In this document: positions 1 through 64,000 of the stretch, in pieces | Layout: the number at the start of each line of letters is the position of its first letter | How positions within the stretch are numbered: the stretch's first letter is position 1 | From: Octopus sinensis | Taxonomy: Eukaryota | DNA length: 64,000 bases | Direction of reading: 5' to 3' | Assembly: GCF_006345805.1 (NCBI RefSeq) | Contig: NC_043000.1 | Span: 162,874,001-162,938,000, forward strand | Position numbers and translations under genes: made by a program | The notes under the pieces: generated by a model | Told to the model about the DNA's origin: nothing | The model's database searches: none | What the model saw: the letters and a program-made list of their open reading frames with translations, nothing else

Positions 1-30
1 TAAAGAGTAATATATATATATATATATATA

Positions 31-418
31 GGCGCAGGAGTGGCTGTGTGGTAAGTAGCTTGTCTACCAACCACATGGTTTCGGGTTCAGTCCCACTTGG
101 GCAAGTGTCTTCTACTATAGCCTCGGGCCGACCAAAGCCTTGTGATTGGATTTGGTAGACGGAAACTGAAAAGAAGCCCGTCGTATATATGTGTATATAT
201 ATATATGCGTGTGTGTGTTTGTGTGTCTGTGTTTGTCCCCTAGCATTGCTTGACAACCGATGCTGATGTGTTTATGTTTCCGTTACTTAGCGGTTCGGCA
301 AAAGAGACCGATAGAATAAGTACTGGGCTTACAAAAGAATAAGTCCCGGGGTCGAGTTGCTCGACTAAAGGCGGTGGTCCAGCATGGCCGCAGTCAAATG
401 ATTGAAACAAGTAAAGAG

Positions 419-2918: not shown

Positions 2919-3147
2919 TACTCTTTACTCTTTTACTCTTTTACTTGTTTCAGTCATTTGACTGCGGCCATGCTGGAGCACCGCCTTTAGTCGATCAACT
3001 CGACCCCGGGACTTATTCTTTGTAAGCCCAGTACTTATTCTATCGGTCTCTTTTGCCGAACCGCCAAGTGACGGGGACGTAAACACACCAGCATCGGTTG
3101 TCAAGCAATGCTATGGGGACAAACAGAGACACACAAACCCCCCCACC

Positions 3148-3208
<61 letters not shown>

Positions 3209-3368
3209 GACAGGCTTCTTTCAGTTTCCGTCTACCAAATCCACTCACAAGGCATTGGTCGGCCCGGGGCTATAGCAGAAGACACTTGCCCAAGATGCCA
3301 CGCAGTGGGACTGAACCCAGAACCATGTGGTTGGTTAGCAAGCTACTTACCACACAGCCATTCCTGCG
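2919..3368 (-). mobile_element. SINE family A, full copy
   Basis: Reverse complement of 31-420, with a tandem (AGAGTAAA)-like tail and an internal (CA)/(TA) tract. Confidence 0.85.
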
Positions 3369-4164
3369 TGTATGTGTTCGATATGTTCTGTATTCGTAGC
3401 TAAGATTTGAACCTATGTACTACATAAGTATTCCACCGAGTACAGTTGCTTGTTTTTGTTCCTACTTCATTTCTATTACTTTTGTAAAAGCTCATAAACT
3501 CCATATAACATCATCCACTCTCCTGCAATAAAACATTCTTTAATCATTTCTCGATCTTAAAAAACATTGAATTTTTTAAAAAGAATTTCTCATACAACGC
3601 GAGTATAGATTAGTGGCTAAATATCTATTCGTATGCGACTTTATGTTAGTGTCTGTGTATGCATCTTTGCGCGTCAGACACATGAAATATTATTTAATAG
3701 GTCATGCACGCCGTTGTTCTGCAAGGTATGGATAAAAATTTGGGGCATGAGTTTCGCGTGAAGGTACCACGTAGGATGGAAGAAGCTTATATAAGTATAT
3801 TTGGTAGGATTTGAATTGAGATGGCGCAGTGAAAACGAGAGTTACTGTAGATAGAAGCGATTGTTTTTGTTTAGACGAAGTTCATCTGTATTTGATCAAA
3901 ATTATCATGAAGGGTTTTCACACATGACCATAGGAATATATAGGTCTATATTGTCTAATATATCCTTCATTTATTTCAGTAAGAGGGTTTGATACGCTTT
4001 GTGAGTGAATTGGCTGGTATTTGTAGCAGATTGAACGACTTCGCAGCGTACAGCTGGTGAAGAACATTGTTGCTGTAGTTTATTGACGAAACGAAGTTTG
4101 TCAGCCACTCAAATGGCTGAATGTTTTGGCTGATAAGACATAAATATATTATATTATATATACT

Positions 4165-6381: not shown

Positions 6382-6729
6382 TTGTTCTCTGTGAACGAAA
6401 ATTTCAGTGTCCATAAGGTCGCTCGGCTAGGAAGATTCCAAGCGAACCCAACCTCAGATACTAGACCACGCCCAATAAGGGTAATCTTTTCTTCGGATCG
6501 GGAGGCTTCAGTCTTTCTAAACAGAGCTCAGACGCATGCCTGGGAGGACCCCAATATGGGTTTTCGCGAGGAATACTCACTAAGAGAGAGAATTCGCCGG
6601 AGAAACCTAATATCCGAACTAAAGATGAGGAAACAAATGGGAGAGAAGGGTTTACGAATCCAAGATGGACAGATAATCAAGTCCTACCTCTGGTACCATG
6701 CTGTAGTGCTGACAGGGAAAGTGATGTGA
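6382..6729 (+). pseudogene. LINE ORF1 C-terminal fragment
   Basis: RPRPIRVIF...FREEYSLRERIRRRNLISELKMRKQMGEKGLRIQDGQI is typical of CR1/L2-type ORF1 C-termini. No true N-terminus (track start is TTG). Confidence 0.7.
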
Positions 6730-9615
6730 GGGCAAATCGAAGTGAAGTTGATACCCGCGTCAACGATGCTATCTCTGATACCCCTTATTCTGCTTGTTCC
6801 CCAACTCCCGCCCCTCAGACTTCACAGCTCAGCATCGTCTACACCAACTCGTGCTCCTTATTCCCAAAGTTCAGTGAACTATTTACACTGGCCATACGTG
6901 ACTCCCCTGATGTGATAGCTATCACCGAGACTTGGCTGACTCCAGCAGTAAAGGACTCAGAAATCCACCTGCAGGGCTACGTCCTTTTCAGATGTGACAG
7001 AGGAAAAAGGCGAGGTGGAGGTGTTGCTGTGTATGTTAAGTCTGAGCACAAACCGTCCAGCGGTATTCTACCCACTAATGCTCAACCTACAACAAAATTC
7101 GATGCCGTCTATTGCAAGCTGAGCCTATCTGAGTTTTGCCTGCCCGTGTTGGCTGTCTACAGGCCGCCTCTTGCCGACCCCCAGGACGATGCTCATTTAC
7201 TCGAAGCGATAAGATTCGTTTCAGCTTCGCATGACTGTTTGGTACTAGGAGACTTCAACGCTCCCACGATCGATTGGCCCGCATCAATTTGTACAACATC
7301 TTCCCGGTTCGGCCAGGCCCTTCTTGACGTGGCGGAAGATTGTTTTCTATCGCAACATGTTGAATATCCGACAAGGCATCGGTCTGGGCAGCAGCCATCT
7401 ATGCTAGATCTGGTATTCTCCCGCTATCCAAGATCAGTGTCAGACGTATCTGTGTGCGCCCCTCTTGCCAAGAGTGATCATGCGGTCCTGAAGTTCGTCA
7501 TGCACACAACTTTTTCTACGCCCACGACTACGTCGCTGCCACGTAGAGTCTTCTCTGCAATTAATCTTGAAATTCTAACCGAGGCTTCCGCGCTTCTGGA
7601 CTGGCGATCCCTGATGACGTTGTCCTCAGTTGACGAACTATGGTCATCCTTCAAAGCATATGTAATCTGTTTGACTGACCAGGCAGTTCCCGTTGGGCTT
7701 CCCAAGAAGAAGAGACACAAGCCCTGGGTGACGAAGAAGGTTAAACGAGAACGTCGACTCAGAGATATTGCTTGGGCTGAATTCAAAAATCTGGATTCGA
7801 CTGCAGCTTTTGAGGTGTACAAAACTCAACGAGACCGAGCCGTGAAAATTGAAAAGAAAGAACGCTTCAGTTATGAATACAAAATCGCGGCAAATGCCAG
7901 TAGCAATCCAAAAACCTTCTTTGCCCATGTCCAGCGGAATTCCCGCTTGAACAACCAGATTGCAACGTTGGTAGACTCAACAGGCGTATCGATTGAGGAC
8001 CCTTATCAACAGAGTCAATTATTTGCCGAGGCTTTTTCAACTATTTTCAAACAAGATGATGGTCGTGAACCCCCTCCATTTGATAGATCGGTACCTCCAA
8101 TGCTTCGATTGGTCATCATGCGGGACGAAGTCAAACGTGTTATTCAAGGCCTCGATGTCAACAAGGGTCACGGCCCTGACGGCATACACCCACGGGTTAT
8201 CAAAGCGTTGGCTCCGGTCATCTGCGAGCCCTTAACACGACTATTCAATATGTCATTGGCGACGGGTGTTATACCTGCAGACTGGAAAACAGCGATAATC
8301 TGCCCAATTTTCAAGAAAGGGAGCCGCGAAGACCCGCTTAACTACCGACCGGTTTCCCTTACATCAATAATCAGCAAGATGTTCGAAACCATCCTTAAGA
8401 AAAGTATGATGCTCCACCTCCTAAACACAGCCTCTATCTCTGATTCCCAACACGGCTTCGTGCCGAAGAGATCATGCTTGACTAACTTACTAGTAATGGA
8501 AGAATTGGTGACGCGCATCCTCGATGATAGTGACGCTGTTGACATCGTTTTATTGGACTTTGCCAAAGCTTTTGACTCGGTAAACCACCGCCTATTACTT
8601 GTCAAGCTTCAAGCATATAGTTTCCATCCGGATATTATACGATGGGTTGGTGCTTTCCTCTCAGATCGCTCCTTCCAAGTCCAAGTTAATGGTTCGCGGT
8701 CCGACGTCTCCAGTGCGAGCAGTGGCGTGCCTCAAGGTTCAGTGCTTGGGCCCTTGTTGTTCTTAGTCTTCATAAATGACTTGCCCAACGACCTCACGCA
8801 ACACACCCTTCTATTTGCCGACGATATCAAACTGGTCGCTCCTCGCGGTAATATAGAGGATCTTCGCCGATGCCTCCACCAAATTTGGAAGTGGTCTAAC
8901 GATTGGGACCCTGTGTCTGAACGTGTCAAAGTGCTGTCATCTGCCTGTCGGCTCTACTCCTGCAACTCAACTTGATTTCGAGCCGGGTCGTCTGCTGCTG
9001 GAGAGGACCGATCAGGTAAAGGACCTGGGTATCTTGGTGGATTCCTCCTTTTCGCCTTCGGCCCAGTGCGTCCATGCTGCCAACAAAGCACGCGGAATTC
9101 TGTTCTTGATTCGACGGTCATTCGGAATGCTCACAGCAGCCATATTCCTACCACTCTATGTCACGCTGGTGAGACCCATATTGGAGTATGGGATTCAAGC
9201 CTCTTCTCCTTATCTCCTCAAAGACATACAGCATCTCGAAAGAGTCCAGAGGCTGGCTACCCTCATGGTTCATGGTCTCAAAAATTTGTCCTACGAAGAA
9301 AGGCTGAGGACGCTCGGCCTTTATTCTCTGGAAAAACGCCGCCGCCGTGGTGATCTCATTCTCGCCCACAACATCATAAGCGGAAAGTGTAACCTCTCGA
9401 AAGAGCTGTTCTTCACTCCTGCTCCGGAGCGTCGGCTGCGGGGTCATTCCGAAAAGCTCTACCTGCGACGATTTCATCTCAATCGAAGGAGAGGAGCTTT
9501 CTCCGTCCGGGTTGCGGATCCGTGGAACAAGCTGCCAGACGAGATGGTGAAGATGCCGACGACCGCTTTGTTCAAAGCCTCCCTGGACCTCAAGTGGCCT
9601 GAACTCTTTACATGA
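6726..9615 (+). pseudogene. LINE ORF2 (AP endonuclease plus reverse transcriptase), split by one extra C at 8909-8911
   Basis: APE motifs YTN, ITETW, GGGVAVYVK, LGDFN, LDL, SDH. RT motifs NYRPVSLTS, LDFAKAFDSV, GVPQGSVLGPLLF, FADD. Removing one C from gaccctg joins 6726..8975 to 8923..9615 as DWDLCLNVSKC. Confidence 0.92.
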
Positions 9616-10494: not shown

Positions 10495-10651
10495 AGTGGC
10501 TGTGTGGTAAGTAGCTTCCTTACGAACCACATGGTTCCAGGTTCTGTCCCACTGCGTGGCACCTTCGACAAGTGTCTTCTATTATAGCCTCGGGCCGACC
10601 AAAGCGTTGTGAGTGGATTTGGTAGGCGGAAACTGAAAGAATCCCGTCGTA
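10495..10651 (+). mobile_element. SINE family A 5' module
   Basis: agtggctgtgtggtaagtagc...gaaactgaaagaatcccgtcgtat. Confidence 0.8.
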
Positions 10652-10858
10652 TGTGTGTGTGTGTGTCTGTGTGTGTGTATACATAAATATGTGTTTGATA
10701 AGTTGTAGATAATTACAGGAATAAAATTAGAATACCTGAGAGTACTTACTACGTTTATTAGTAATACACAGTTGACAAAACGTTTCATACTTCTATAAAA
10801 TGCAATCATCAGACAAGCAAGTTTCTAAAATATGTGCGTGTGCGCGCGCACGTGTGTG

Positions 10859-18680: not shown

Positions 18681-21600
18681 GTTATTATTATTAGAGACGT
18701 CGCACAGTATAAAATATCTTGAGGTTGTTGATTGAAGATGTTGTGTCTACCGGGAATTTCTACTGTCTATCAAGTCACAACAAAACCTCAGACAGACAGG
18801 ACTTTACACAATATGCGTGCAGTTCCAAACAGTGCCGACTTTTGCAATACATCTAGATTGTAAGGTATCTCTAAGGTTTTCAGATGTCTTTTCAGATTGG
18901 GTGGTATTGAATCCAATGCTCTGATGAGAATAGGGATAACCTTTATGTTTGACTCTCGTAACTTCCACACCTTAGGGATCTCAATTATCAGGTTTCCATA
19001 TTTATCAACTTTTTCTCTTTCGTTCATGATGATATGTCGATCTCCTAGCACTGTTACGTCGATTATTAGGCACTCTTGTTTGTACCTCCTAAAAGTTACT
19101 ATACTCGGCGTTCGGTGCTCTAACACTTTGTCTGTCTAGAAATCAAAGTCCCTGAGAATTTTTGCCTTCCATTTTTCGTCCATTGCCATTTCCGACACTC
19201 GCAACTTCATATTCATACTTACGGCATAGTACCCAGTGGAGGTTATGGGCTACTTTGTAGTGTTACGCTTTTACTCTTTCTGCGCAAGACTTTCACGAGC
19301 ACTAACAATGTGAGTCACACTTTCGACCCTCTTCCCACAAATTCTGCAGATGTCCGATGCACCTGTGTGGTATATATTCTTTTTTACTGAGTTGTTATTC
19401 AATGCCTGATCCTGAGCCGCGATGATTAGGCTTTCAGCATTCTTTTCTAGGTCAACCTTCGGTTAATATAGGGCGTTACGATTATCATAAAATCAACAAA
19501 AAAATGTGTGTAATAGGTGTAAAACAACTTCCTATGAACGAATATGAAAAAAAAAATTCGCGCACGCGAAAGGGGGGTGGGGGAGAGGCCTCGGAAAATT
19601 CACATCGGGAAGTTCCGAAAGCGTCTGAGGAGCTGACCCGGGCACCAAAACAAATAAAAATTGTGGTAATATGTGTAAAACAACTTGCTCTAAACGAATA
19701 TGACAAAAAAAATGCGCTCTCGCGAAAGAGAGGGTGGGGGAGAGGCCTCGGAAAATTTATATCGGGAATTTCCGAAAGCGTCTGAACCGGGCACAAAAAC
19801 AAAAACAAAACAGCGTAATAGGTGTAAAACAACTTGCTCTAAACGACTATCATGAAAAAATGCGCGCTCGCGAAAGGGGGGTGGGGGAGAGGCTTCGGAA
19901 ATTTCACATCTTCAGTCCACGGCCTTTAACTAAGAAAAAATAGTGTAATTGGTGTAAAACTACTTGTTCTAAACGAGTATCAAGAACACACACTCACACA
20001 TGAATCATAAAATCATATTTCGCAAAAAAAAATATAAAGAGAAGAAATTCTGGAAAAAGTGAAGAAATGTTGGATCTCCGCCATGTGAATCAAAATACGT
20101 GTCAGAAACATCTTGAAATACTACAGAAATTATGTTACGAAAATGATAATGTATACATACCTCTTTGAGTGGTCCATCGATAATGATAATAAAGAAATGA
20201 GTTGGATTTGAACTCAGAATATTGACTAACACAACTACATACTACAAGACTCAAAATATTCAGCCAAGTCACCACCCTATAACTAGCAATAATAATAACA
20301 TCAATAACATAACAGCCAAAAGATTTATTTGTTCTGAAAATAACAATCATAGTAAATAAATATGTTCTTTAATATTCACATTCATGTGCACAGTTAAACA
20401 CACTTACATGCAAACAGTCACGCATGCATAATACAGAACGGAACACATAAATGAAGGATGCATTACTTAGTATATATTACATCTAGAGAATTTTGATTAA
20501 TAAGTCAAATATGCAAATTATAAAGATAATTAATTGCTTTACTAAACAGTGTTGTAAAGGTGAAAAAATAAATTTGGGAAAAAAATACACGCCAAAACTA
20601 AATAATAAAGGATAATTAGGGAAGGATTGACACAAAATAATAATTTTTTCTGTCTCTTTTTTTCTGATAAATGCATCTTAATAAGTGAGAAGAATTGCAT
20701 ATATCTGAACTATTTCAAAGAAAAGCATAAATTTAATGTTTAAAATAGCTTTAACCAAGGAATGAGATCCAACATTTCTTCACTTTTTCCAGAATTTCTT
20801 CTCTTTATTTTTTTTTTTTGCGAAATATGATTTTATGATTCATGTGTGAGTGTGTGTTCTTGATACTCGTTTAGAACAAGTAGTTTTACACCAATTACAC
20901 TATTTTTTCTTAGTTTAAAGGCCGTGGACTGAAGATGTGAAATTTCCGAAGCCTCTCCCCCACCCCCCTTTCGCGAGCGCGCATTTTTTTCATGATAGTC
21001 GTTTAGAGCAAGTTGTTTTACACCTATTACGCTGTTTTTGTTTTTGTTTTTGTGCCCGGTTCAGACGCTTTCGGAAATTCCCGATATAAATTTTCCGAGG
21101 CCTCTCCCCCACCCCTCTTTCGCGAGAGCGCATTTTTTTTGTCATATTCGTTTAGAGCAAGTTGTTTTACACATATTACACAATTTTTTATTTGTTTTGG
21201 TGCCCGGGTCAGCTCCTCAGACGCTTTCGGAACTTCCCGATGTGAATTTTCCGAGGCCTCTCCCCCACCCCCCTTTCGCGTGCGCGAATTTTTTTTTCAT
21301 ATTCGTTCATAGGAAGTTGTTTTACACCTATTACACACATTTTTTTGTTGATTTTATGATAATCGTAACGCCCTATATTAACCCAACCTTCTGGAGCCAC
21401 CTCAATGATGCTCCCTGGTCTTTTAATTCGTTGGTTTCACGGTGGAAATGACCATGTAATTCCATGCGGAGTAGGGTTTCTTCTCTCTTGTTGGCTGTTC
21501 ATGACTAGAATTCATGAGTATTCTCAAGTACCTTTTTGTTAACTCCTTCTGCACCAGCAGCATGCTGTAACAGGTTGACTATGGAGTAGATTTCCTATAC

Positions 21601-38159: not shown

Positions 38160-38260
<101 letters not shown>

Positions 38261-38330
38261 CCCGGGTTGATTCGGGGTTAACCACAGTAAATAAAGTACT
38301 CAATACTAGCAGAGTAAAATAAAAATAATT

Positions 38331-39399
38331 ATTATATAGAAGGAGCTTCTACAGGACTAGAACTGTTTCATTCAAGAGAATCTTCAGGAAGCTAGTTAAC
38401 AAGAATTGTATTGGCATTTATACATTTAGGCAGGTTTAAAGGGGTGGTGGTTCGGGACTTTTTGGGGGTAGGCATAGCGCAAAATATCATACTTGGGGGA
38501 GTGGTCAAGGAGTCAGTGGTAAATTAGATAAAAGAATAAATAAAAGAATAAAAAAATATATAAAAGAATCGAGTTTTAGGTAAATAAGGAGATTCTCACT
38601 TATACCTATACACATATGTATAAATATACACACACACACACACACATATACATACACACATACATACACACACACATATATATATATACATACACATACA
38701 TACATATATCTACACATATATATACATATATATATATATATACCTATATATACACACATACATACACATACATATATATACACACACACACACACATATG
38801 CATACACATATACACACACACATTTATATATACACACACGACCACACATACATATACACAAATAAAAATATATACATACACACACATACACATACACGCG
38901 TACACACACATATCCACATACACACATGCACACACAACACACAAGTCCCTATATACACATATATACACATACACACATATACATATATATACATATATAT
39001 ATATATATATACATATGTGTACCTATACATACCTACACATACACACATTTTTACATACAAATACAGACCCATTCCCTAATTTTAATTTTATTATCTTCAT
39101 TTATTACTTTTGTTATCTTTGACCGCTGGTCACAAGCATCTTGGCTATGACAGCAAGTCCATTTATCTTTCTACTTGAAAACAAGCACTCATTCACGCAC
39201 GCACACTCACTCATTCGTACACTCATACGCATACACGCAATCACGCGTTATATTCATACATACGTACATCTACATACATTCACGTATATACACATACGTA
39301 CGCGTACCTACAGATTCATGTCTACACTCTTAGAAGGCTAGTCTTATACATATACACCAATAAATATATATACACACATACATATACACCTACATACAA

Positions 39400-39448
<49 letters not shown>

Positions 39449-39561
39449 ACATATATATACATATATAACATATACATACATATATACACGCATACATACA
39501 TACATACATACATACATCCATACATACATACATATATACACATACACACACCCACACGTAT
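38331..39561 (-). repeat. Left arm of ~1.25-kb inverted repeat (probable Penelope-like 3' terminal region)
   Basis: Colinear reverse complement of 42728-43980, including unique blocks 38331-38610 and 39061-39360 and the intervening microsatellite pattern. Confidence 0.9.
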
Positions 39562-42727: not shown

Positions 42728-42836
42728 ATACGTGTGGGTGTGTGTATGTGTATATATGTATGTATGTATGGATGGATGTATGTATGTATGTATGCGTGTA
42801 TATGTATGTTGTATATGATATATATGTATATATATG

Positions 42837-42870
<34 letters not shown>

Positions 42871-43980
42871 ATATATATTATAATATATATATATATGTAT
42901 GTATGTGTATGTAGGTGTATATGTATGTGTGTATATATATTTATTGGTGTATATGTATAGACTAGCCTTCTAAGAGTGTAGACATGAATCTGTAGGTACG
43001 CGTACGTATGTGTATATACGTGAATGTATGTAGATGTATGTATGAATATAACGCGTGCGTGCGTGTATGCGTATGAGTGTACGAATGAGTGAGTGTGCGT
43101 GCTAATGAGTGTGCGTGCGTGAATGAGTGCTTGTTTTCAAGTAGAAAGAGATAATGGACTTGCTGTCATAGCCAAGATGCTTGTGACCAGCGGTCAAAGA
43201 TAACAAAAGTAACAAATGAGATAAAATTAAAATTAGGGAATGGTCTGGATTTGTATGTAAATGTGTGTATGTGTAGGTATGTATAGGTACACATATGTAT
43301 ATATATATATATGTATATATCTGTATATGTGTGTATGTGTATATATGTGTATATAGGGACTTGAATGTTGTGTGTGCATGTGTGTATGTGGATATGTGTG
43401 TGTACGCGTGTATGTGTATGTGTGTGTATGTATATATTTTTATGTGTGTATATGTATGTGTGGTCGTGTGTGTATATATAAATGTGTGTGTGTATATGTG
43501 TATGCATATGTGTGTGTGTGTGTATATATATATGTATGTGTATGTATGTGTGTATATATAGGTATATATATATATATGTATATATATGTGTAGATATATG
43601 TATGTATGTGTATGTGTATGTATATATATATATGTGTGTGTGTGTATGTATGTGTGTATGTATATGTGTGTGTGTGTGTGTGTATATGTATACATAAGTG
43701 TATAGGTATAAGTGAGAATCTCCTTATTTACCTAAAACTCGATTCTTTATATATTTTTTTCTCTTTTATTTATTTTTTGATCTAATTACCACTGACTCCT
43801 TGACCACTCCCCCAAGTATGATATTTTTGCGCTATGGCCTACCCCCAAAAAGTCCCGCATCACCACCCCTTTTAAACCTGCCTAAATGTATAAATGCCAA
43901 TACAATTCTTGTTAACTAGCTTCCTGAGATTTCTCTTGAATGAAACAGTTCTAGTCCTGTAGAAGCTCCCTCTATATAAT
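42728..43980 (+). repeat. Right arm of ~1.25-kb inverted repeat
   Basis: Matches 38331-39561 and begins within about 10 bp of the truncated 5' end of the Penelope RT. Confidence 0.9.
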
Positions 43981-44093
43981 ATATATATATATATATATAA
44001 TATATATATAATGTATATATATGATGTATGTATGTATATATATAGATATATATAGTATGTATATAGATATATATTATATAATATATATTATAG

Positions 44094-44132
<39 letters not shown>

Positions 44133-44201
44133 GTGTATATATATAGATATTATATATATCTGTATATATAGATATATATAATATATGTATTAATCTTATG
44201 T

Positions 44202-47991: not shown

Positions 47992-48170
47992 GGCGCAATG
48001 GCCCGGTGGTTAGGAAAGCGAACTCGCGGTTGTAGGATCACGGTTTCGATTCCCAGACCGGGCGTTGTTGGTGTTTATTGAACCCTGCTGCACTCTTTCA
48101 CCACAACTTTCTCTTAGTCTTTCTTCCTATTTTCAGAGGGCCAACCTTGTCATACCCTGTGTCACGTTGA
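47992..48170 (+). mobile_element. SINE family B head, internally deleted, different 3' part
   Basis: ggcgcaatggcccggtggttagg...ggtttcgattcccagaccgggcgttg. Confidence 0.75.
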
Positions 48171-48203
48171 ATCTTCCGGGGAAGATATAAATATATATAT
48201 ATA

Positions 48204-48613
48204 GGCGCAGGAGTGGCTGTGTGGTAAGTAGCTTGTTTACGAACCACATTGTTCCGGGTTCAGTCCTACTGCGTGGCACCTCGGGTAAGTGTCTTCTACT
48301 ATAGCCTCGGGCTGACCAAAGCCTTGTGAGTGGATTTGGTAGACGGAAACTGAAAAGAAGCCCGTCGTATATATCTATATATATATATATGTGTGTGTGT
48401 GTTTGTGTGTCTGTGTTTGTCCGCTTAGCATTGCTTGACAACCGATGCTGGTGTGTTTACGTCTCCGTAACTTAGCGGTTCGGCAAAAGAGACCGATAGA
48501 ATAAGTACTGTGCTTACAAAAGAATAAGTCCCGGGGTCGAGTTGCTCGATTAAAGGCGGTGCTCCAGCATGGCCGCAGTCAAATGACTGAAGCAAGTAAG
48601 AGAGTAAAGAGTA
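48204..48613 (+). mobile_element. SINE family A, full copy
   Basis: Close match to 31-420. A degenerate second 3' module follows at about 48660-48845. Confidence 0.85.
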
Positions 48614-55755: not shown

Positions 55756-56136
55756 TACTCTTTTACTTGGTTCAGTCATTTGACTGCGGCCAGCACCGCC
55801 TTTAGTCGAGCAAATCGACCTGGGACTTATTCTTTGTAAGTCCAGTACTTATTCTATCGGTCTGTTTTGCCGAACCGCTAAGTGACGGGGACGTAAACAC
55901 ACCAGCATCGGTTGTCAAGCAATGCTAGGGGGACAATCACACAAACACATACAGACACATATATATACATATATACGACAGGCTTCTTTCAGTTTCCGTC
56001 TACCAAATCCACTCACAAAGCATTGGTCGGCCCGGGGCTATAGCAGAAGACATTTGCCCAAGATGCCACGCAGTGGGACTGAACCCGGAACTATGTGGTT
56101 GGTTAGCAAGCTACTTACTACACAGCCACTCCTGCG

Positions 56137-56138
<2 letters not shown>
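55756..56138 (-). mobile_element. SINE family A, full copy
   Basis: Reverse complement of the family consensus. Confidence 0.85.
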
Positions 56139-56172
<34 letters not shown>

Positions 56173-56562
56173 TATATATATATATAGATATATATATATA
56201 TATATATATATATCTTGAAGTTGAATGAAAATTGGTAAACTTAGATGTGAAGTCATATTTGATGCATCTTCATCTTTATTTTGTTTTTGTTTTGTTTTTT
56301 TGTATTTGTTGTTTAGCTCCGAGTCAATCCCGAATGAGATTTGAATGAGATTTGGCTGCTCTTAGAAGCAGATTAAAGAGGCAACCTCTTAGATTTTGGC
56401 TTATTAATTCATATACTTAATTGTAAGCCATCAGGGTGTAGCTATTTTTTTTTTCAATAAGCTTTAAGTAAAATTAAAAGAAACTATTTGCTGTAAGATA
56501 ACAATTCCAGGCTGCGTCTGCGTGGGTCGTGGTGTATTATATAATACTAACAATCACCCTGT

Positions 56563-57250: not shown

Positions 57251-60200
57251 ACTTTTTTTTTTCTTCTTTCAAATTTTCTTCCATTTCTTGCCGAGTGTCT
57301 TCCCGACTCCTAGGGCAAAGAAACTCATAGTGTATATTGGTAGGCCATTAAACAAACTCAGTAGTTCGTTCATTTTTTTTTTTTTTAAGTTAAATTAAAA
57401 TACATGAGCAGCAACAGTTCTCACATCGACAATGCTCTTCTCAATACGTGTGATATACCAGTTAAGACAATCTTTTGCACTTCTTGCAGGGATGGTAAGC
57501 CAGGGATCATTCTCATATAATTTTCGGTTCCCTTCTTGATCATTCCTAGTGCTCCTACGATCACTGGTATTGTAACCGCCTTGAGATGCCACATTTTCTC
57601 AATTTCAATGAGTAGGTCTTTATATTTTCTGAGCTTGTCAAACTCTTTCGCTGAGATATTATGATCACAGGGATGCTCATGTCGATCAATAAGCAAACTT
57701 TATTGTTTTGGTCTTTCACAACAATATCTGGTTTATTGGCCTTGATGGTTCGGTCTGTATGTACTGGAAAGTCCCACAGAATGGTTACATTTTCTCCTTC
57801 AGTTACAGCCTCAGGGTGGTGATTATACCACTTGTCGGCAGTTTTGATATTGTAATGCCGACTTATTAGCCAGTGGAGATATTGGCCAACTCTGTCATGT
57901 CTTAATTTATACTCCACTGGTGCTAAGACTTTACATCCAGAGATTAGGTGGTCCACTGTTTCAATCATGTCGTTGCAGAATCGGCATTTTGGGTCTGCTC
58001 CATTTTTCATCACATTGGCCTGGTAGTTCCGGGTTAATAGGCTTTGGTCTTGAGCAGCCAGGATGAAACCTTCGCTCTCTGCTTTTAGCCCTGAGCTCCG
58101 CAGCCACTGATGGGTTTGCTTCTGGTCAACATCAGCTTGTTTGCTGCGGGTCACATATTTGCCGTGCAGAGGTTTCTCCTCCCACCTATCAGCCAATTGC
58201 TCGTGCGCTTTTTTCATTGCCATCATTTTCACCTTCTTTGCAACAATAGTTGCCGTACTTCCCTCGGGTTGTTCAGTTTGGGTATCCTGCACGAGAGCAA
58301 TAGCAATTTTTTTGCTTTCCTTTATGATAGAATGAAGCTTCTTTCGTCTCTCGTGATTTTCCACGAGCTTTAGCATCCAGTCATTCGATATTTCGAGATA
58401 TTTGGCCAGTCCAATTGTGGTTGTTTTGTAAGCTAGTTCAAATTGGATCAGGCCTCGACCCCTTGGGCTCTGGAAAGGTAAAGGCGATCTACGTCTGCCT
58501 TTGGGTGGTGCATCCTATTACAACTCAGCAGCTTGCGTATTTTTCTATCTATATTCTTTACTTCACTCATATTCCAGTTCAACACATTGTAGCTATAAGT
58601 AACAACTGGAACTGCTAAGGAATTTATAGCTAACACCTTGTTACGTGCATTTAGTTCAGATTTCAGGACTGCACGAACTCTCCTATAACATTCCTTCCTG
58701 ATTTTCTCTTTCATGCTTGCATGCTGAATACCAGAGCCTTCATTTATCCCTAAATATTTGTATGTCTGTTCTTGCTCAAGCTCTCTTATGACTGTGTCAA
58801 CATCTAGCACGACTGAATTTGTGGTCTTCACTTTCCCTTTCTGGAAAGTGGCCTTGGCACACTTCTCAAGTCCAAACTCCATCCCGATGTCATCGCTGAA
58901 TGCTTTCACGGTGCGCAATAGGCCTTCAAGTTCATTATTGTCTTTACCATAAAGTTTTAAGTCATCCATATAAAATAGATGGCTTATTTTTTTATTGGCA
59001 ATTTTATACCCTACCCTGTTCTGTTTAATTCACTTGTAAGGGGTATTAGGGCTATGCAGAATATTAAAGGTGAAAGTGAGTCACCTTGAAAACTTCCACA
59101 GTTGATGTTTATATTTTCTGAGGCAAGTACTCCATTAGAGTGGTATAATTGGAGATTCGTATTCCACAACGACATATTGTGCTTCAGGAAGTTTGAAATC
59201 ACAGGGGAAATTTTAAAGATGTCCAGCGATCTCAAGATCCATGGATGCGGTATACTGTCGAAGGCCTTTTTATAGTCAATCCATGCGGTGCTGAGATTTC
59301 TGCGCTTGTTGTGACAGTTCTCAAGGATCATACAATTGATTAGCAGTTGATCTTTGCATCCGTAAGAGCCTCGGCGGCACCCTTTTTGTTCAATGGGGAA
59401 AATATCGTTCTTCTCCATGAATGCATATGTTTTCTCCGCCAGGATAGATGTTAGGATTTTATACGTGGTGGATAGACAGGTTATAGGCCGATAGTTTTTT
59501 TGAAGGTTGGTTTCGTTATTCTTTGGGAGTAGGTAAGTAATGCCACTTGCTACCATTCAGGTGTTTTCTTTGGGTCTCTCAAAATTCCATTGAGCAGCTG
59601 AACTAGCTTACCGTGTGCGCACGGGAGCGATGCGAGCCAGAAATTCGGCACCCTATCTTTACCGGGGGATTTCCATTATGAGCCTTCGTGAGTGCCTTCT
59701 TAGGTCTTCTATTGTGATGTCTTCCCATGCTTGTTGTTGTAAATTTTGGTACGATCCTTCAGTTTGTATAATCCAGTCTGCATTTATGTTGTACGTCTTC
59801 TTGTCACTCCAAATCCTTTCCCAAAAGTTTTGAACTTCTTCCATGGGAGGGGGGTCTTTAACGGTTACTTTCTCCTTCCCTATTTCTCTGTAGAATTTTT
59901 TGGCATTGGATGTGAACAGCTTATTTTGCTTGTAAAACTTGTTTCTTTTCTCAAATCTTCGTATTCTTTGGGCTTTTGCTTGGACTTTTTGTTTCAGGCG
60001 TTCTTTTATTGATATCAGTTCTTCTCTTGGTGAGGATCCAAATTTTCTCTCATCTTTCTTCCTGTTCTGGATCTTACATCATTTCCACATATTAGTTCAT
60101 TTAATATTGATATTTCCCCTCTCATAAATTCAATCTCTTTTTCAATTTTACTTCTCCAGGTTTGATTTCTTCCCAGGTTTTGCTTTCTTTGTTTTTCGGG

Positions 60201-61120
60201 GGCATACAGCTGGTTTCAATTGCCCTAGCAGAAGCGTAAATAATTTCATTTAACTCAGTAAAATCAGGTTTTAATTCTCGTATTATTTCATTTGTTACAT
60301 AGTTGCCAATTTGGATTTGTTTTTTATTTTGGTTTGTATTTGAGAGTTTATGAAGTGGTTCTCTATCATTCATACTTGTATGTCTTACAACTTCAAGCGT
60401 ATTCAGGATTTTCTGCCTCATTTCTGCCATAGACTCTCTGTGTTCTTCAGCAAATGCGAGATCTTCAGTTACTGTTGTTTTTTGTTTTCCTGGCTATCTT
60501 TAACAGGTACAATAGAATTTCTTGTATCTTCAGGCCTTTGCGTACTTTGGTCAGATGGCAGTCTTTCAATTAAGCCTCGTGGCGGGCTATACTGTTCATC
60601 TGATTCTTCATTTCCTTTGTGTCTTATATTTATGTCATTTCCGTTGCGTGCTTGATCGCACTTATTTCACTGTCTGTGAGTCTGTTATTTCTAAAGATAT
60701 CCCTCCTCACATTTGCTAATTTGTTCTCGTCCAAATAGGGCCTACTGTCTTGATTCCGTGTTCTCCATATACTGTAAGAGTTTGCGGTGTGTCTCTCTTG
60801 AGATGGCCTACCTAATGCATAGTAATAAGCGTATATTACTTCTTTATACTCTTCTCGGGTCCATTTGTTCCGCTTACATTTTTCTTTCTGTGGTGGTTGT
60901 GGTGGTGAACTTGGAGGGCTCGAGTTGGGGGATTTCCCGTTCAAGTGACCATCCATGTCCGTATTCGGAGAAGAGTTTGTGCCAGTTGATGACTTTTCGA
61001 TCCCAGGCTGGCTCTTCCCTGGGCGACGCGCTTCCAGATTAACCATAGGACAAGCGATTTGGTATACTGATTTAGTTTTCCTTTTAGTTTCCAAAAACAT
61101 TTTGGTGCTACGATAATGTT
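57251..61120 (-). mobile_element. Near full-length Dong/R4-clade non-LTR retrotransposon (RT, zinc knuckle, restriction-like endonuclease), frameshifted, flanked by TAA/TTA-type repeats
   Basis: N-terminal KWTREEYKEVIYAYY. RT motifs RPITCLSTTYK, AWIDYKKAFDSIPH, FQGDSLSPL, YMDDLKLY. Then AAQDQ, CRFC...ETVDHLISGC and RLE KPDIVV...LIDMS. About 3.7 kb of coding potential in several pieces. Confidence 0.9.
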
Positions 61121-62774: not shown

Positions 62775-64000
62775 TACTTTTTTTTCTTCTTTCAAATTTG
62801 CTTCCATTTCTTGCCGAGTGTCTTCCCGACTCCTAGGGCAAAGAAACTCATAGTATACATTGGTAGGCCATTAAACCAAACTCAGTAGTTCGTTCATTTT
62901 TTTTTTTTTAAGTTAAATTAAAATACAGGAGCAGCAACAGTTCTCACATCGACAATGCTCTTCTCAATACGTGTGATGTACCAGTTAAGACAATCTTTTG
63001 CACTTCTTGCAGGGATGGTAAGCCAGGGATCATTCTCATATAATTTTCGGTTCCCTTCTTGATCATTCCTAGTGCTCCTACGATCACTGGTATTGTAACC
63101 GCCTTGAGATGCCACATTTTCTCAATTTCAATGAGTAGGTCTTTATATTTTCTGAGCTTGTCAAACTCTTTCGCTGAGATATTATGATCACAGGGGATGC
63201 TCATGTCGATCAATAAGCAAACTTTATTGTTTTGGTCTTTCACAACAATATCTGGTTTATTGGCCTTGATGGTTCGGTCTGTATGTACTGGAATGTCCCA
63301 CAGAATGGTTACATTTTCTCCTTCAGTTACAGCCTCAGGGTGGTGATTATACCACTTGTCGGCAGTTTTGATATTGTAATGCCGACTTATTAGCCAGTGG
63401 AGATATTGGCCAACTCTGTCATGTCTTAATTTATACTCCACTGGTGCTAAGACTTTACATCCAGAGATTAGGTGGTCCACTGTTTCAATCATGTCGTTGC
63501 AGAATCGGCATTTTGGGTCTGCTCCATTTTTCATCACATTGGCCTGGTAGTTCCGGGTTAATAGGCTTTGGTCTTGAGCAGCCAGGATGAAACCTTCGCT
63601 CTCTGCTTTTAGCCTGAGCTCCGCAGCCACTGATGGGTTTGCTTCTGGTCAACATCAGCTTGTTTGCTGCGGGTCACATATTTGCCGTGCAGAGGTTTCT
63701 CCTCCCCTATCAGCCAATTGCTCGTGCGCTTTTTTCATTGCCATCATTTTCACCTTCTTTGCAACAATAGTTGCCGTACTTCCCTCGGGTTGTTCAGTTT
63801 GGGTATCCTGCACGAGAGCAATAGCAATTTTTTTGCTTTCCTTTATGATAGAATGAAGCTTCTTTCGTCTCTCGTGATTTTCCACGAGCTTTAGCATCCA
63901 GTCATTCGATATTTCGAGATATTTGGCCAGTCCAATTGTGGTTGTTTTGTAAGCTAGTTCAAATTGGATCAGGCCTCGACCTCCTTGGGCTCTGGAAGGT
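62775..64000 (-). mobile_element. Second near-identical Dong/R4 copy (3' part; continues beyond the window)
   Basis: Matches 57251-58480 almost base for base. (TTA)n at 62722-62775. Confidence 0.92.

What the first reader, a model, noticed from the sequence alone, without database searches (positions are those of the whole stretch)
19453..21391. Young 1.92-kb foldback transposon with ~620-bp tandem-repeat TIRs, GG termini and an 8-bp TSD
Seen: arms 19461-20078 and 20764-21383 are inverted copies that differ mainly in homopolymer lengths. Each arm holds about 3.3 copies of a ~150-bp unit (taataggtgtaaaacaactt...cgcgaaagggggtgggggagaggcctcggaaa...). The 685-bp core is AT-rich and non-coding. 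CAACCTTC is duplicated exactly at both ends, and removing the element plus one TSD restores the Dong/R4 frame WLQKVDLEKNAESLIIAAQDQAL. Known: 8-bp TSDs occur in hAT, P and Merlin; hAT and P ends usually start C/TAG or CA, while Merlin/IS1016 ends start GG; MULE foldbacks usually give 9 bp. Inference: a recently mobile, possibly unclassified Merlin-like foldback family, with the subrepeats acting as arrayed transposase-binding sites.
Basis: partly seen in the sequence, partly recalled or inferred. Interest (0 to 1): 0.7.

Follow-up and report, generated by a model that had tools for sequence, protein, structure and literature searches.

The report
Non-coding foldback transposon inside a retrotransposon
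A 1.9-kb non-coding mobile DNA element, built of two nearly identical 620-bp inverted arms, has inserted into an old retrotransposon copy and duplicated 8 bp of target; it is a real but ordinary foldback transposon, and this single copy cannot show which transposase family moves it.

Summary
Arms 19461-20078 and 20764-21383 are inverted copies: 614 of 623 aligned columns are identical, with 1 substitution and 8 one-base indels, mostly in A-runs. Each arm has a unique 28-nt terminus starting GG, an array of ~150-bp units (TRF 2.7-2.8 copies), and a unique inner domain. The 685-bp core is 28% GC and has no protein domain. CAACCTTC flanks both ends exactly. Removing the element and one CAACCTTC restores a 98-aa reading frame that aligns without a gap to paralogous and foreign retrotransposon proteins. 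It is therefore a genuine insertion of a non-autonomous cut-and-paste foldback element.

The "Merlin-like" assignment is not established. GG termini plus an 8-bp duplication fit Merlin. They fit animal Mutator-like foldbacks equally well: Muta1 has terminus GGGTCTACCC, 8- or 9-bp duplications and subterminal repeats, and Tetris has 8-9-bp duplications and ~220-bp repeats in its arms. hAT is disfavoured because the YARNG terminus and the NT....AN target are both absent.

No second copy, no autonomous partner and no described match was found in any collection I could reach. The source genome is not in those collections. Verdict: new member of a known kind, low to moderate interest.

The parts
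19453..19460 (.). Left copy of the 8-bp target-site duplication CAACCTTC
   Evidence: Exact match to 21384-21391 and not extendable in either direction.
19461..19488 (+). Left terminal unique domain of the arm, GGTTAATATAGGGCGTTACGATTATCAT. This is the presumed cleavage and primary recognition end.
   Evidence: The 30-mer starting at 19461 occurs only here and, inverted, at 21354-21383. It has no significant similarity to the subrepeat: 96% of shuffles score at least as high.
19489..19986 (+). Left subrepeat array: two full ~150-bp units, one truncated unit and one stub that retains only the 32-nt module
   Evidence: TRF period 157, 2.8 copies, 82%. Modules counted. Unit alignment A2.
19987..20078 (+). 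Left inner unique domain of the arm. It contains ATCATAAAATCA, which also occurs at 19484.
   Evidence: Still part of the inverted repeat (I12). The 12-mer repeat is shown.
20079..20763 (.). Non-coding AT-rich middle domain (loop), 685 bp
   Evidence: GC 27.7% and CpG o/e 0.53. ORFs are 75 aa or shorter. No Pfam hit.
20764..21383 (-). Right arm, a mirror image of 19461-20078: inner domain, subrepeat array, then terminal domain ending ...CGCCCTATATTAACC
   Evidence: Global alignment 614/623. TRF period 149, 2.7 copies.
21384..21391 (.). Right copy of the 8-bp target-site duplication CAACCTTC
19274..19460 (-). Downstream half of the interrupted host reading frame (…KVDLEKNAESLIIAAQDQAL…CRICGKRVESVTHIVSA…), the post-RT CCHC region of a degraded retrotransposon
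   Evidence: Aligns to paralogues and to P0001-P0003. The paralogues carry RVT_1 and zf-RVT.
21392..21498 (-). Upstream half of the interrupted host reading frame (TANKREETLL…GASLRWLQ)

Best explanation
This is one copy of a non-autonomous class II (cut-and-paste) transposon of foldback architecture. It consists of two 618/620-bp terminal inverted repeats around a 685-bp non-coding middle. It inserted into the post-RT region of an already decaying retrotransposon.

Shown: the inverted arms, their internal ~150-bp tandem units, the absence of coding capacity, the exact 8-bp duplication, and restoration of the host frame when the element plus one duplication is removed.

Inferred: it encodes nothing, so a transposase made elsewhere in the genome must move it. 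That enzyme would recognise the unique GG-initiated terminus, cut at the arm ends, and join them to target DNA cut with an 8-bp stagger. Repair of the stagger gives CAACCTTC on both sides. The 32-nt module, repeated four times per arm, is the best-conserved part of the units. It is the most likely accessory binding site that loads several transposase molecules and raises excision frequency, as measured for Muta1 and proposed for Galileo and Tetris.

The superfamily is unresolved. My estimates are Mutator-like/foldback about 0.4, Merlin about 0.3, and others (P, hAT, Zisupton, Novosib, unknown) about 0.3.
For: Arms 614/623 identical, and base 1 pairs with base 1923 in the DNA fold. Exact 8-bp duplication at the precise arm ends, with chance about 2.5e-5. 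The empty site restores a 98-aa frame that is collinear with five homologues. No ORF longer than 75 aa in the core and no Pfam domain in six frames. Subrepeat modules occur 4 and 3 times per arm and nowhere else in 64 kb. Units within an arm are only 82-85% alike, while matching units of the two arms are nearly identical, so the array is an inherited feature of the family rather than a recent local expansion. Precedents for the architecture and for the role of the subrepeats: Muta1, Tetris and Galileo.
Against: Only one copy is available. No second copy, family consensus or autonomous partner was found. Mobility in trans, the family's copy number and the binding role of the subrepeats are therefore inference. 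The terminal 28 nt show no similarity to the subrepeat, unlike Tetris, where the repeat derives from the terminal domain. High arm identity could reflect gene conversion between the arms rather than youth.
Confidence: 0.85

Rival explanations
1. Mutator-like (MULE/Foldback) non-autonomous element, mobilised by a MULE transposase as Muta1 derivatives and Tetris are thought to be.
For: Aedes Muta1-14 all give 8-9-bp duplications, and 12 of 14 have TIRs over 100 bp, mostly with subterminal tandem repeats. Muta1 starts GGGTCTACCC, is called a type 2 foldback, and its repeats increase binding, cleavage and excision. [quoted passage not shown]
Against: Muta subterminal repeats are 9-15 bp, not ~150 bp. 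No MULE transposase domain occurs among the 150 longest ORFs of the window. One 8-bp duplication cannot show the 8/9/10-bp spread typical of MULEs.
Confidence: 0.4
2. Merlin-superfamily non-autonomous element, mobilised by a DDE_Tnp_IS1595-type transposase.
For: Merlin is defined by 8- or 9-bp duplications and TIRs that always start 5'-GG, and some families carry tandem repeats of 52-163 bp (PMC8101967). The element starts GG and has an 8-bp duplication.
Against: Reported Merlin TIRs span 24-462 bp, and no foldback-type Merlin is described in the papers read. GG plus 8 bp is shared with Muta1-type MULEs. No IS1595-type domain is present in the window.
Confidence: 0.3
3. hAT, P (Galileo-like), Zisupton, Novosib or a still undescribed superfamily.
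For: hAT gives 8-bp duplications. Galileo (P superfamily) has 0.9-1.26-kb TIRs with ~210-bp internal tandem repeats that hold secondary transposase-binding sites. Zisupton and Novosib are listed with 8-bp duplications (my own knowledge of the Repbase classification, not checked here).
Against: hAT ends are YARNG and its targets are NTNNNNAN or NTCTAGAN. Here the end is GGTTA, and the target is CAACCTTC (GAAGGTTG on the other strand), which has A at position 2 and T at position 7 either way. Galileo makes 7-bp duplications.
Confidence: 0.25
4. Not a transposon: a local palindromic duplication, or a foldback chimera created by long-read sequencing or assembly.
For: The arms differ almost only by homopolymer length, the typical error of long-read assemblies. 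Another large inverted repeat exists in the window (38160-39561 / 42728-44149).
Against: A chimera or local inversion-duplication would not bring in 1.9 kb of sequence unrelated to the host. It would not place it between exact 8-bp direct repeats at the precise arm ends, or leave a host frame that closes perfectly on removal.
Confidence: 0.03

Closest known systems
Tetris / DAIBAM foldback elements of Drosophila virilis (PMC4079207)
   Same: Non-coding. Long TIRs built of a terminal unique domain, a block of long tandem repeats (~220 bp there, ~150 bp here) and an inner domain, around a variable non-coding middle. 8-9-bp target duplications. No autonomous partner known.
   Different: No sequence similarity was tested or expected. 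In Tetris the repeat shares 37 bp with the terminal domain, and here no such similarity exists. Tetris TSDs range 8-10 bp over several copies, while only one copy is seen here.
Muta1 and other Aedes aegypti MULEs, 'type 2 foldback' (PMC5225508, PMC5499845)
   Same: G-initiated terminus (GGGTCTACCC there, GGTTAATATA here). 8- or 9-bp duplication. TIR made of a terminal motif plus subterminal tandem repeats, shown experimentally to enhance transposase binding and excision. Many non-autonomous derivatives.
   Different: Muta1 TIRs are 145 bp with 12-bp repeats, against 620-bp TIRs with ~150-bp units here. Muta1's terminal motif is an imperfect palindrome, and none is evident here. The transposase is known for Muta1 and unknown here.
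Merlin superfamily (Feschotte 2004, as summarised in PMC8101967)
   Same: 5'-GG termini and 8-9-bp duplications.
   Different: Described TIRs are 24-462 bp, and elements are defined by a DDE_Tnp_IS1595 transposase. No transposase is linked to this element, and its foldback architecture is not a described Merlin trait.
Galileo (P superfamily) of Drosophila (PMC3573991, PMC3688188)
   Same: Foldback-like, with TIRs up to 1.26 kb containing ~210-bp direct tandem repeats proposed or shown to hold secondary transposase-binding sites. Abundant two-TIR non-coding derivatives.
   Different: 7-bp duplications, against 8 bp here.

Membership tests
Foldback-type non-autonomous TIR element (structural class) | Long terminal inverted repeats that make up most of the element | tested here: met
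   The 618/620-nt arms account for 64% of the 1923 bp and are 614/623 identical. The hairpin fold is shown.
Foldback-type non-autonomous TIR element (structural class) | TIRs internally made of tandem subrepeats | tested here: met
   TRF period 149-157, 2.7-2.8 copies. Modules occur 4 and 3 times per arm.
Foldback-type non-autonomous TIR element (structural class) | Flanking target-site duplication and a restorable empty site | tested here: met
   CAACCTTC occurs twice. The frame is restored and is collinear with homologues.
Foldback-type non-autonomous TIR element (structural class) | Multiple dispersed copies sharing the same ends (a family) | not testable with these tools
   The window holds a single copy. 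The source genome is absent from the searchable collections.
Merlin superfamily | 8- or 9-bp target-site duplication | tested here: met
   8 bp. Criterion from PMC8101967.
Merlin superfamily | TIR begins 5'-GG | tested here: met
   GGTTAATATAGGG at both ends. Criterion.
Merlin superfamily | Autonomous relative with the same ends encoding a DDE_Tnp_IS1595 transposase | not testable with these tools
   No coding capacity in the element. No such domain among the 150 longest ORFs of the window. No other copy was retrievable.
Merlin superfamily | TIR length within the described range (24-462 bp) | tested here: not met
   618-620 bp, against the range quoted. This range is descriptive rather than strictly defining.
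Mutator-like elements (MULE / Foldback) | 8-10-bp target-site duplication | tested here: met
   8 bp. Animal MULEs give 8-9 bp and Tetris 8-10 bp.
Mutator-like elements (MULE / Foldback) | Long TIRs (over 100 bp), often with subterminal tandem repeats | tested here: met
   However, the unit length of ~150 bp is far above the 9-15 bp of Muta families.
Mutator-like elements (MULE / Foldback) | Autonomous relative encoding a MULE (MuDR-type) DDE transposase | not testable with these tools
   No other copy was retrievable.
hAT superfamily | 8-bp target-site duplication | tested here: met
hAT superfamily | Terminal motif YARNG | tested here: not met
   The terminus is GGTTA. Criterion from PMC3014272.
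hAT superfamily | Target consensus NTNNNNAN / NTCTAGAN | tested here: not met
   CAACCTTC (GAAGGTTG on the other strand) has A at position 2 and T at position 7. Criterion. This is a single site, so the evidence is weak.
P superfamily (Galileo-like foldback) | 7-bp (Galileo) or 8-bp (P) duplication; THAP-domain transposase partner | tested here: inconclusive
   8 bp here, against 7 bp in Galileo. The partner is not testable.

The most novel reading that the evidence does not exclude
The element is the first seen copy of an undescribed foldback family that is mobilised by a Merlin (IS1595-like) transposase. That would extend the foldback architecture, so far tied to the Mutator and P superfamilies, to a third superfamily. 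It would have nucleosome-length (~150-bp) subrepeats that could also seed satellite DNA, as Tetris did.
Probability: 0.15. Interest if true: 0.45.

Novelty: new member of a known kind. Interest (0 to 1): 0.25.

Why it matters
If the family proves recently active, it offers an invertebrate-type genome a further example of a foldback element. Such elements promote inversions and hairpin-mediated breaks, and ~150-220-bp TIR repeats are known seeds of satellite DNA. Finding its transposase would say whether foldback architecture has evolved convergently in yet another superfamily. As it stands, it is one well-delimited insertion. It is useful for repeat annotation and as a dated marker inside an older retrotransposon, and it does not change what is known about transposition.

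Tried and rejected
(1) Other copies in the window. The 30-nt terminus matches only the two ends. blastn of the whole element against the window gave only low-complexity hits of 26 nt or less.

(2) Public DNA collections. A degenerate subrepeat pattern in metagenome contigs gave one hit, and blastn showed it to be a 25-nt chance match. The G-rich module and the 20-nt terminus gave 0 hits in genome contigs and 0 in viral contigs.

(3) Using spurious arm ORFs as bait for other copies. The word-index search gave 0. Full phmmer against 1.84 billion representatives gave 0. Exact look-ups of three element ORFs gave 0.

(4) Identifying the organism. Exact look-ups of three retrotransposon ORFs gave nothing. 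The best homologue of the intact 749-aa EN-RT ORF is only 50% identical and comes from an unnamed assembly. The host-frame homologues are ~50-56% identical and the best one lies on a Tara ocean metagenome scaffold. The window has no tRNA and no Rfam family. The organism stays unknown; the SSR-rich, ~37% GC sequence suggests an animal.

(5) Literature by sequence string: 0 papers.

(6) Transposase remnants. No Pfam family in six frames of the element. Only RT and endonuclease families appear among the 150 longest ORFs of the window.

(7) The idea that the subrepeat contains a copy of the terminal motif, as in Tetris: rejected, because the local alignment scores no better than shuffles.

(8) Reading GAAGTTCCGAA in the unit as a heat-shock-type element: rejected by eye because the spacing is wrong. 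It was not pursued.

Full report
**Observation.**
The region was read directly and analysed with the repeat tools.
- A global alignment of 19461-20078 with the reverse complement of 20764-21383 gives 614 identical columns of 623.
- The differences are one substitution (T/A at 20033) and eight single-base indels. Six of the indels lie in A/T runs.
- Folded as single-stranded DNA, base 1 pairs with base 1923, and 614 of 618 left-arm bases pair with the right arm. The free energy is -819 kcal/mol, against about -170 for shuffles.
- The octamer CAACCTTC abuts both arm ends (19453-19460 and 21384-21391). It cannot be lengthened in either direction.
- The composition-corrected chance of such a match at fixed boundaries is about 2.5e-5.

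**Anatomy of an arm**.
- A unique 28-nt terminus, GGTTAATATAGGGCGTTACGATTATCAT.
- An array of ~150-bp units. TRF gives period 157 on the left and 149 on the right, 2.8 and 2.7 copies, 82-85% matches.
- The array is two full units, one truncated unit and a stub that keeps only the 32-nt module GTAATAGGTGTAAAACAACTTGCTCTAAACGA. That module is therefore present four times per arm.
- The G-rich module GGGTGGGGGAGAGGCCTCGGAAAAT is present three times per arm.
- A unique ~90-nt inner domain.
- Units within an arm are 82-85% alike, while matching units of the two arms are virtually identical. The array is therefore older than the last common ancestor of the two arms.
- The terminal 28 nt show no significant similarity to the unit.

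**Core.**
- The 685-bp core is 27.7% GC, with CpG o/e 0.53 against 1.3 in the arms.
- Its ORFs are 75 aa or shorter.
- The whole element has no Pfam match in any of six frames at E<=1.

**It is an insertion.**
- Joining 19460 to 21392 yields a 98-aa stop-free frame on the minus strand, made of 21498-21392 plus 19460-19274.
- The frame reads through WLQKVDLEKNAESLIIAAQDQAL to a CCHC knuckle (CRICGKRVESVTHIVSA).
- This frame aligns without any gap at the junction to two paralogous copies in the same window (57.5-58.5 kb and 62.9-63.6 kb). It also aligns to three database proteins at 48-56% identity.
- The in-window paralogues carry RVT_1 followed by zf-RVT. The best database protein sits downstream of an RVT_1 gene on a Tara ocean scaffold.
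- The host copy is otherwise broken by stops and frameshifts. The foldback element therefore landed in an old retrotransposon.
- The 'Dong/R4' clade label could not be tested. By eye, a KPDIV…LID pattern in the paralogues is consistent with a restriction-like endonuclease of that group. This is my reading, not a tool result.

**Search for relatives.**
- Nothing related occurs elsewhere in the 64 kb.
- Scans of metagenome, prokaryotic-genome and viral contig collections gave either nothing or one chance match.
- Spurious arm ORFs used as bait found nothing in the 5.8-billion-protein index or in a full HMMER pass over 1.84 billion representatives. Exact look-ups also failed.
- The source genome itself is evidently absent. 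An intact 749-aa EN-RT ORF of the window has a best hit of only 50% identity, and exact look-ups of window ORFs fail.
- No paper in the library prints any of four diagnostic strings.
- Among the 150 longest non-low-complexity ORFs of the window, only reverse-transcriptase and endonuclease families appear, and no transposase.
- Copy number, TSD distribution, the autonomous partner and identity with a Dfam/Repbase family therefore remain untested.

**Mechanism (inferred).**
- The element encodes nothing, so it must be moved in trans by a DDE-type transposase.
- That enzyme would cut at the GG-initiated ends and integrate into a target opened with an 8-bp stagger.
- The 32-nt module, repeated four times per arm, is the best-conserved portion of the units (A2). 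It is the best candidate for an accessory transposase-binding site.
- There is an experimental precedent. In Muta1, more subterminal repeats give more transposase binding. Cleavage requires at least one repeat, and excision in yeast rises with repeat number (PMC5499845).
- Secondary binding sites in tandem repeats are also reported for Galileo (PMC3573991) and proposed for Tetris (PMC4079207).

**Which superfamily?**
TIRs are 24-462 bp and always start GG, and TSDs are 8 or 9 bp (PMC8101967).
- Mutator-like elements: the same two features occur in animal MULEs.
  - All 14 Aedes Muta families have 8-9-bp TSDs.
  - Muta1 starts GGGTCTACCC and reinserts with 8 or 9 bp.
  - Muta1 is classed as a type 2 foldback (PMC5225508, PMC5499845).
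- Tetris is the closest architectural match. It is non-coding, has ~220-bp repeats inside the TIR and 8-9-bp TSDs, and is tentatively placed in Mutator. [quoted passage not shown]
- hAT is disfavoured. Its ends are YARNG and its targets NTNNNNAN. Here the end is GGTTA, and the target has A at position 2 and T at position 7 on either strand.
- Galileo-type P elements make 7-bp TSDs.
- With one copy and no transposase, I put MULE at about 0.4, Merlin at about 0.3 and everything else at about 0.3.

**Age.**
- One substitution in ~615 aligned bases and an intact TSD fit a recent insertion.
- However, arms of a foldback can be homogenised by gene conversion.
- The homopolymer indels may also be assembly errors.
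- 'Young' is therefore plausible but not demonstrated.

**Verdict.**
- The structure is real and well delimited.
- It is a non-autonomous foldback DNA transposon, a known kind. The family is not identifiable with the tools at hand.
- The Merlin-like label is one of two roughly equal candidates, not a finding.
- Interest is low to moderate. It would rise if a Merlin-type partner or polymorphic empty sites were found.

Noticed in passing
window 38160-39561 and 42728-44149: A second large inverted repeat with 1.4-kb arms that are 90% identical. The arms are built of degenerate (ACAT)n/(AT)n/(AC)n sequence. They lie 3.2 kb apart around GC-richer DNA that holds reverse-transcriptase-like fragments (about 40.0-41.9 kb). 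The arm ends lie in microsatellite, so no target duplication can be defined.
   Followed up: partly
window 6465-9615 (+): An apparently intact non-LTR retrotransposon ORF. The 749 aa from the first start at 6726-8975 carry Exo_endo_phos, Exo_endo_phos_2 and RVT_1. A 230-aa continuation lies in another frame (8923-9615). The best database homologue is only 50% identical, so this is possibly a young, lineage-specific CR1/L2-like family.
   Followed up: partly
window 57424-61118 (-) and 62947-63999 (-): Two copies of another retrotransposon, one partial at the window end, with near-identical C-terminal ORFs. They carry RVT_1, a zf-RVT CCHC knuckle, and a KPDIV…LID pattern that resembles a restriction-like endonuclease. 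They are paralogous at 29-37% identity to the host of the foldback insertion.
   Followed up: partly
window 2-271 (-), 3083-3400 (+), 48136-48456 (-), 55886-56215 (+); also 10497-10697: A short interspersed repeat family, whose spurious translation begins THQHRLSSNA…, is present at least four times. Each copy abuts an (AT)n run. Pairs show 83-91% identity. It may be a SINE-like or microsatellite-associated element.
   Followed up: no
whole window: Perfect microsatellites cover 7.2% of the 64 kb, dominated by (AT)n, (ACAT)n and (AC)n. There is no tRNA gene and no Rfam family. No cellular protein-coding gene was recognised among the 150 longest ORFs.
   Followed up: partly
window 19461-20078 versus 20079-20763: The arms are not CpG-depleted (o/e 1.3), while the core (0.53) and the window (0.78) are. 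This is consistent with a young or unmethylated repeat, but the sample is small.
   Followed up: no
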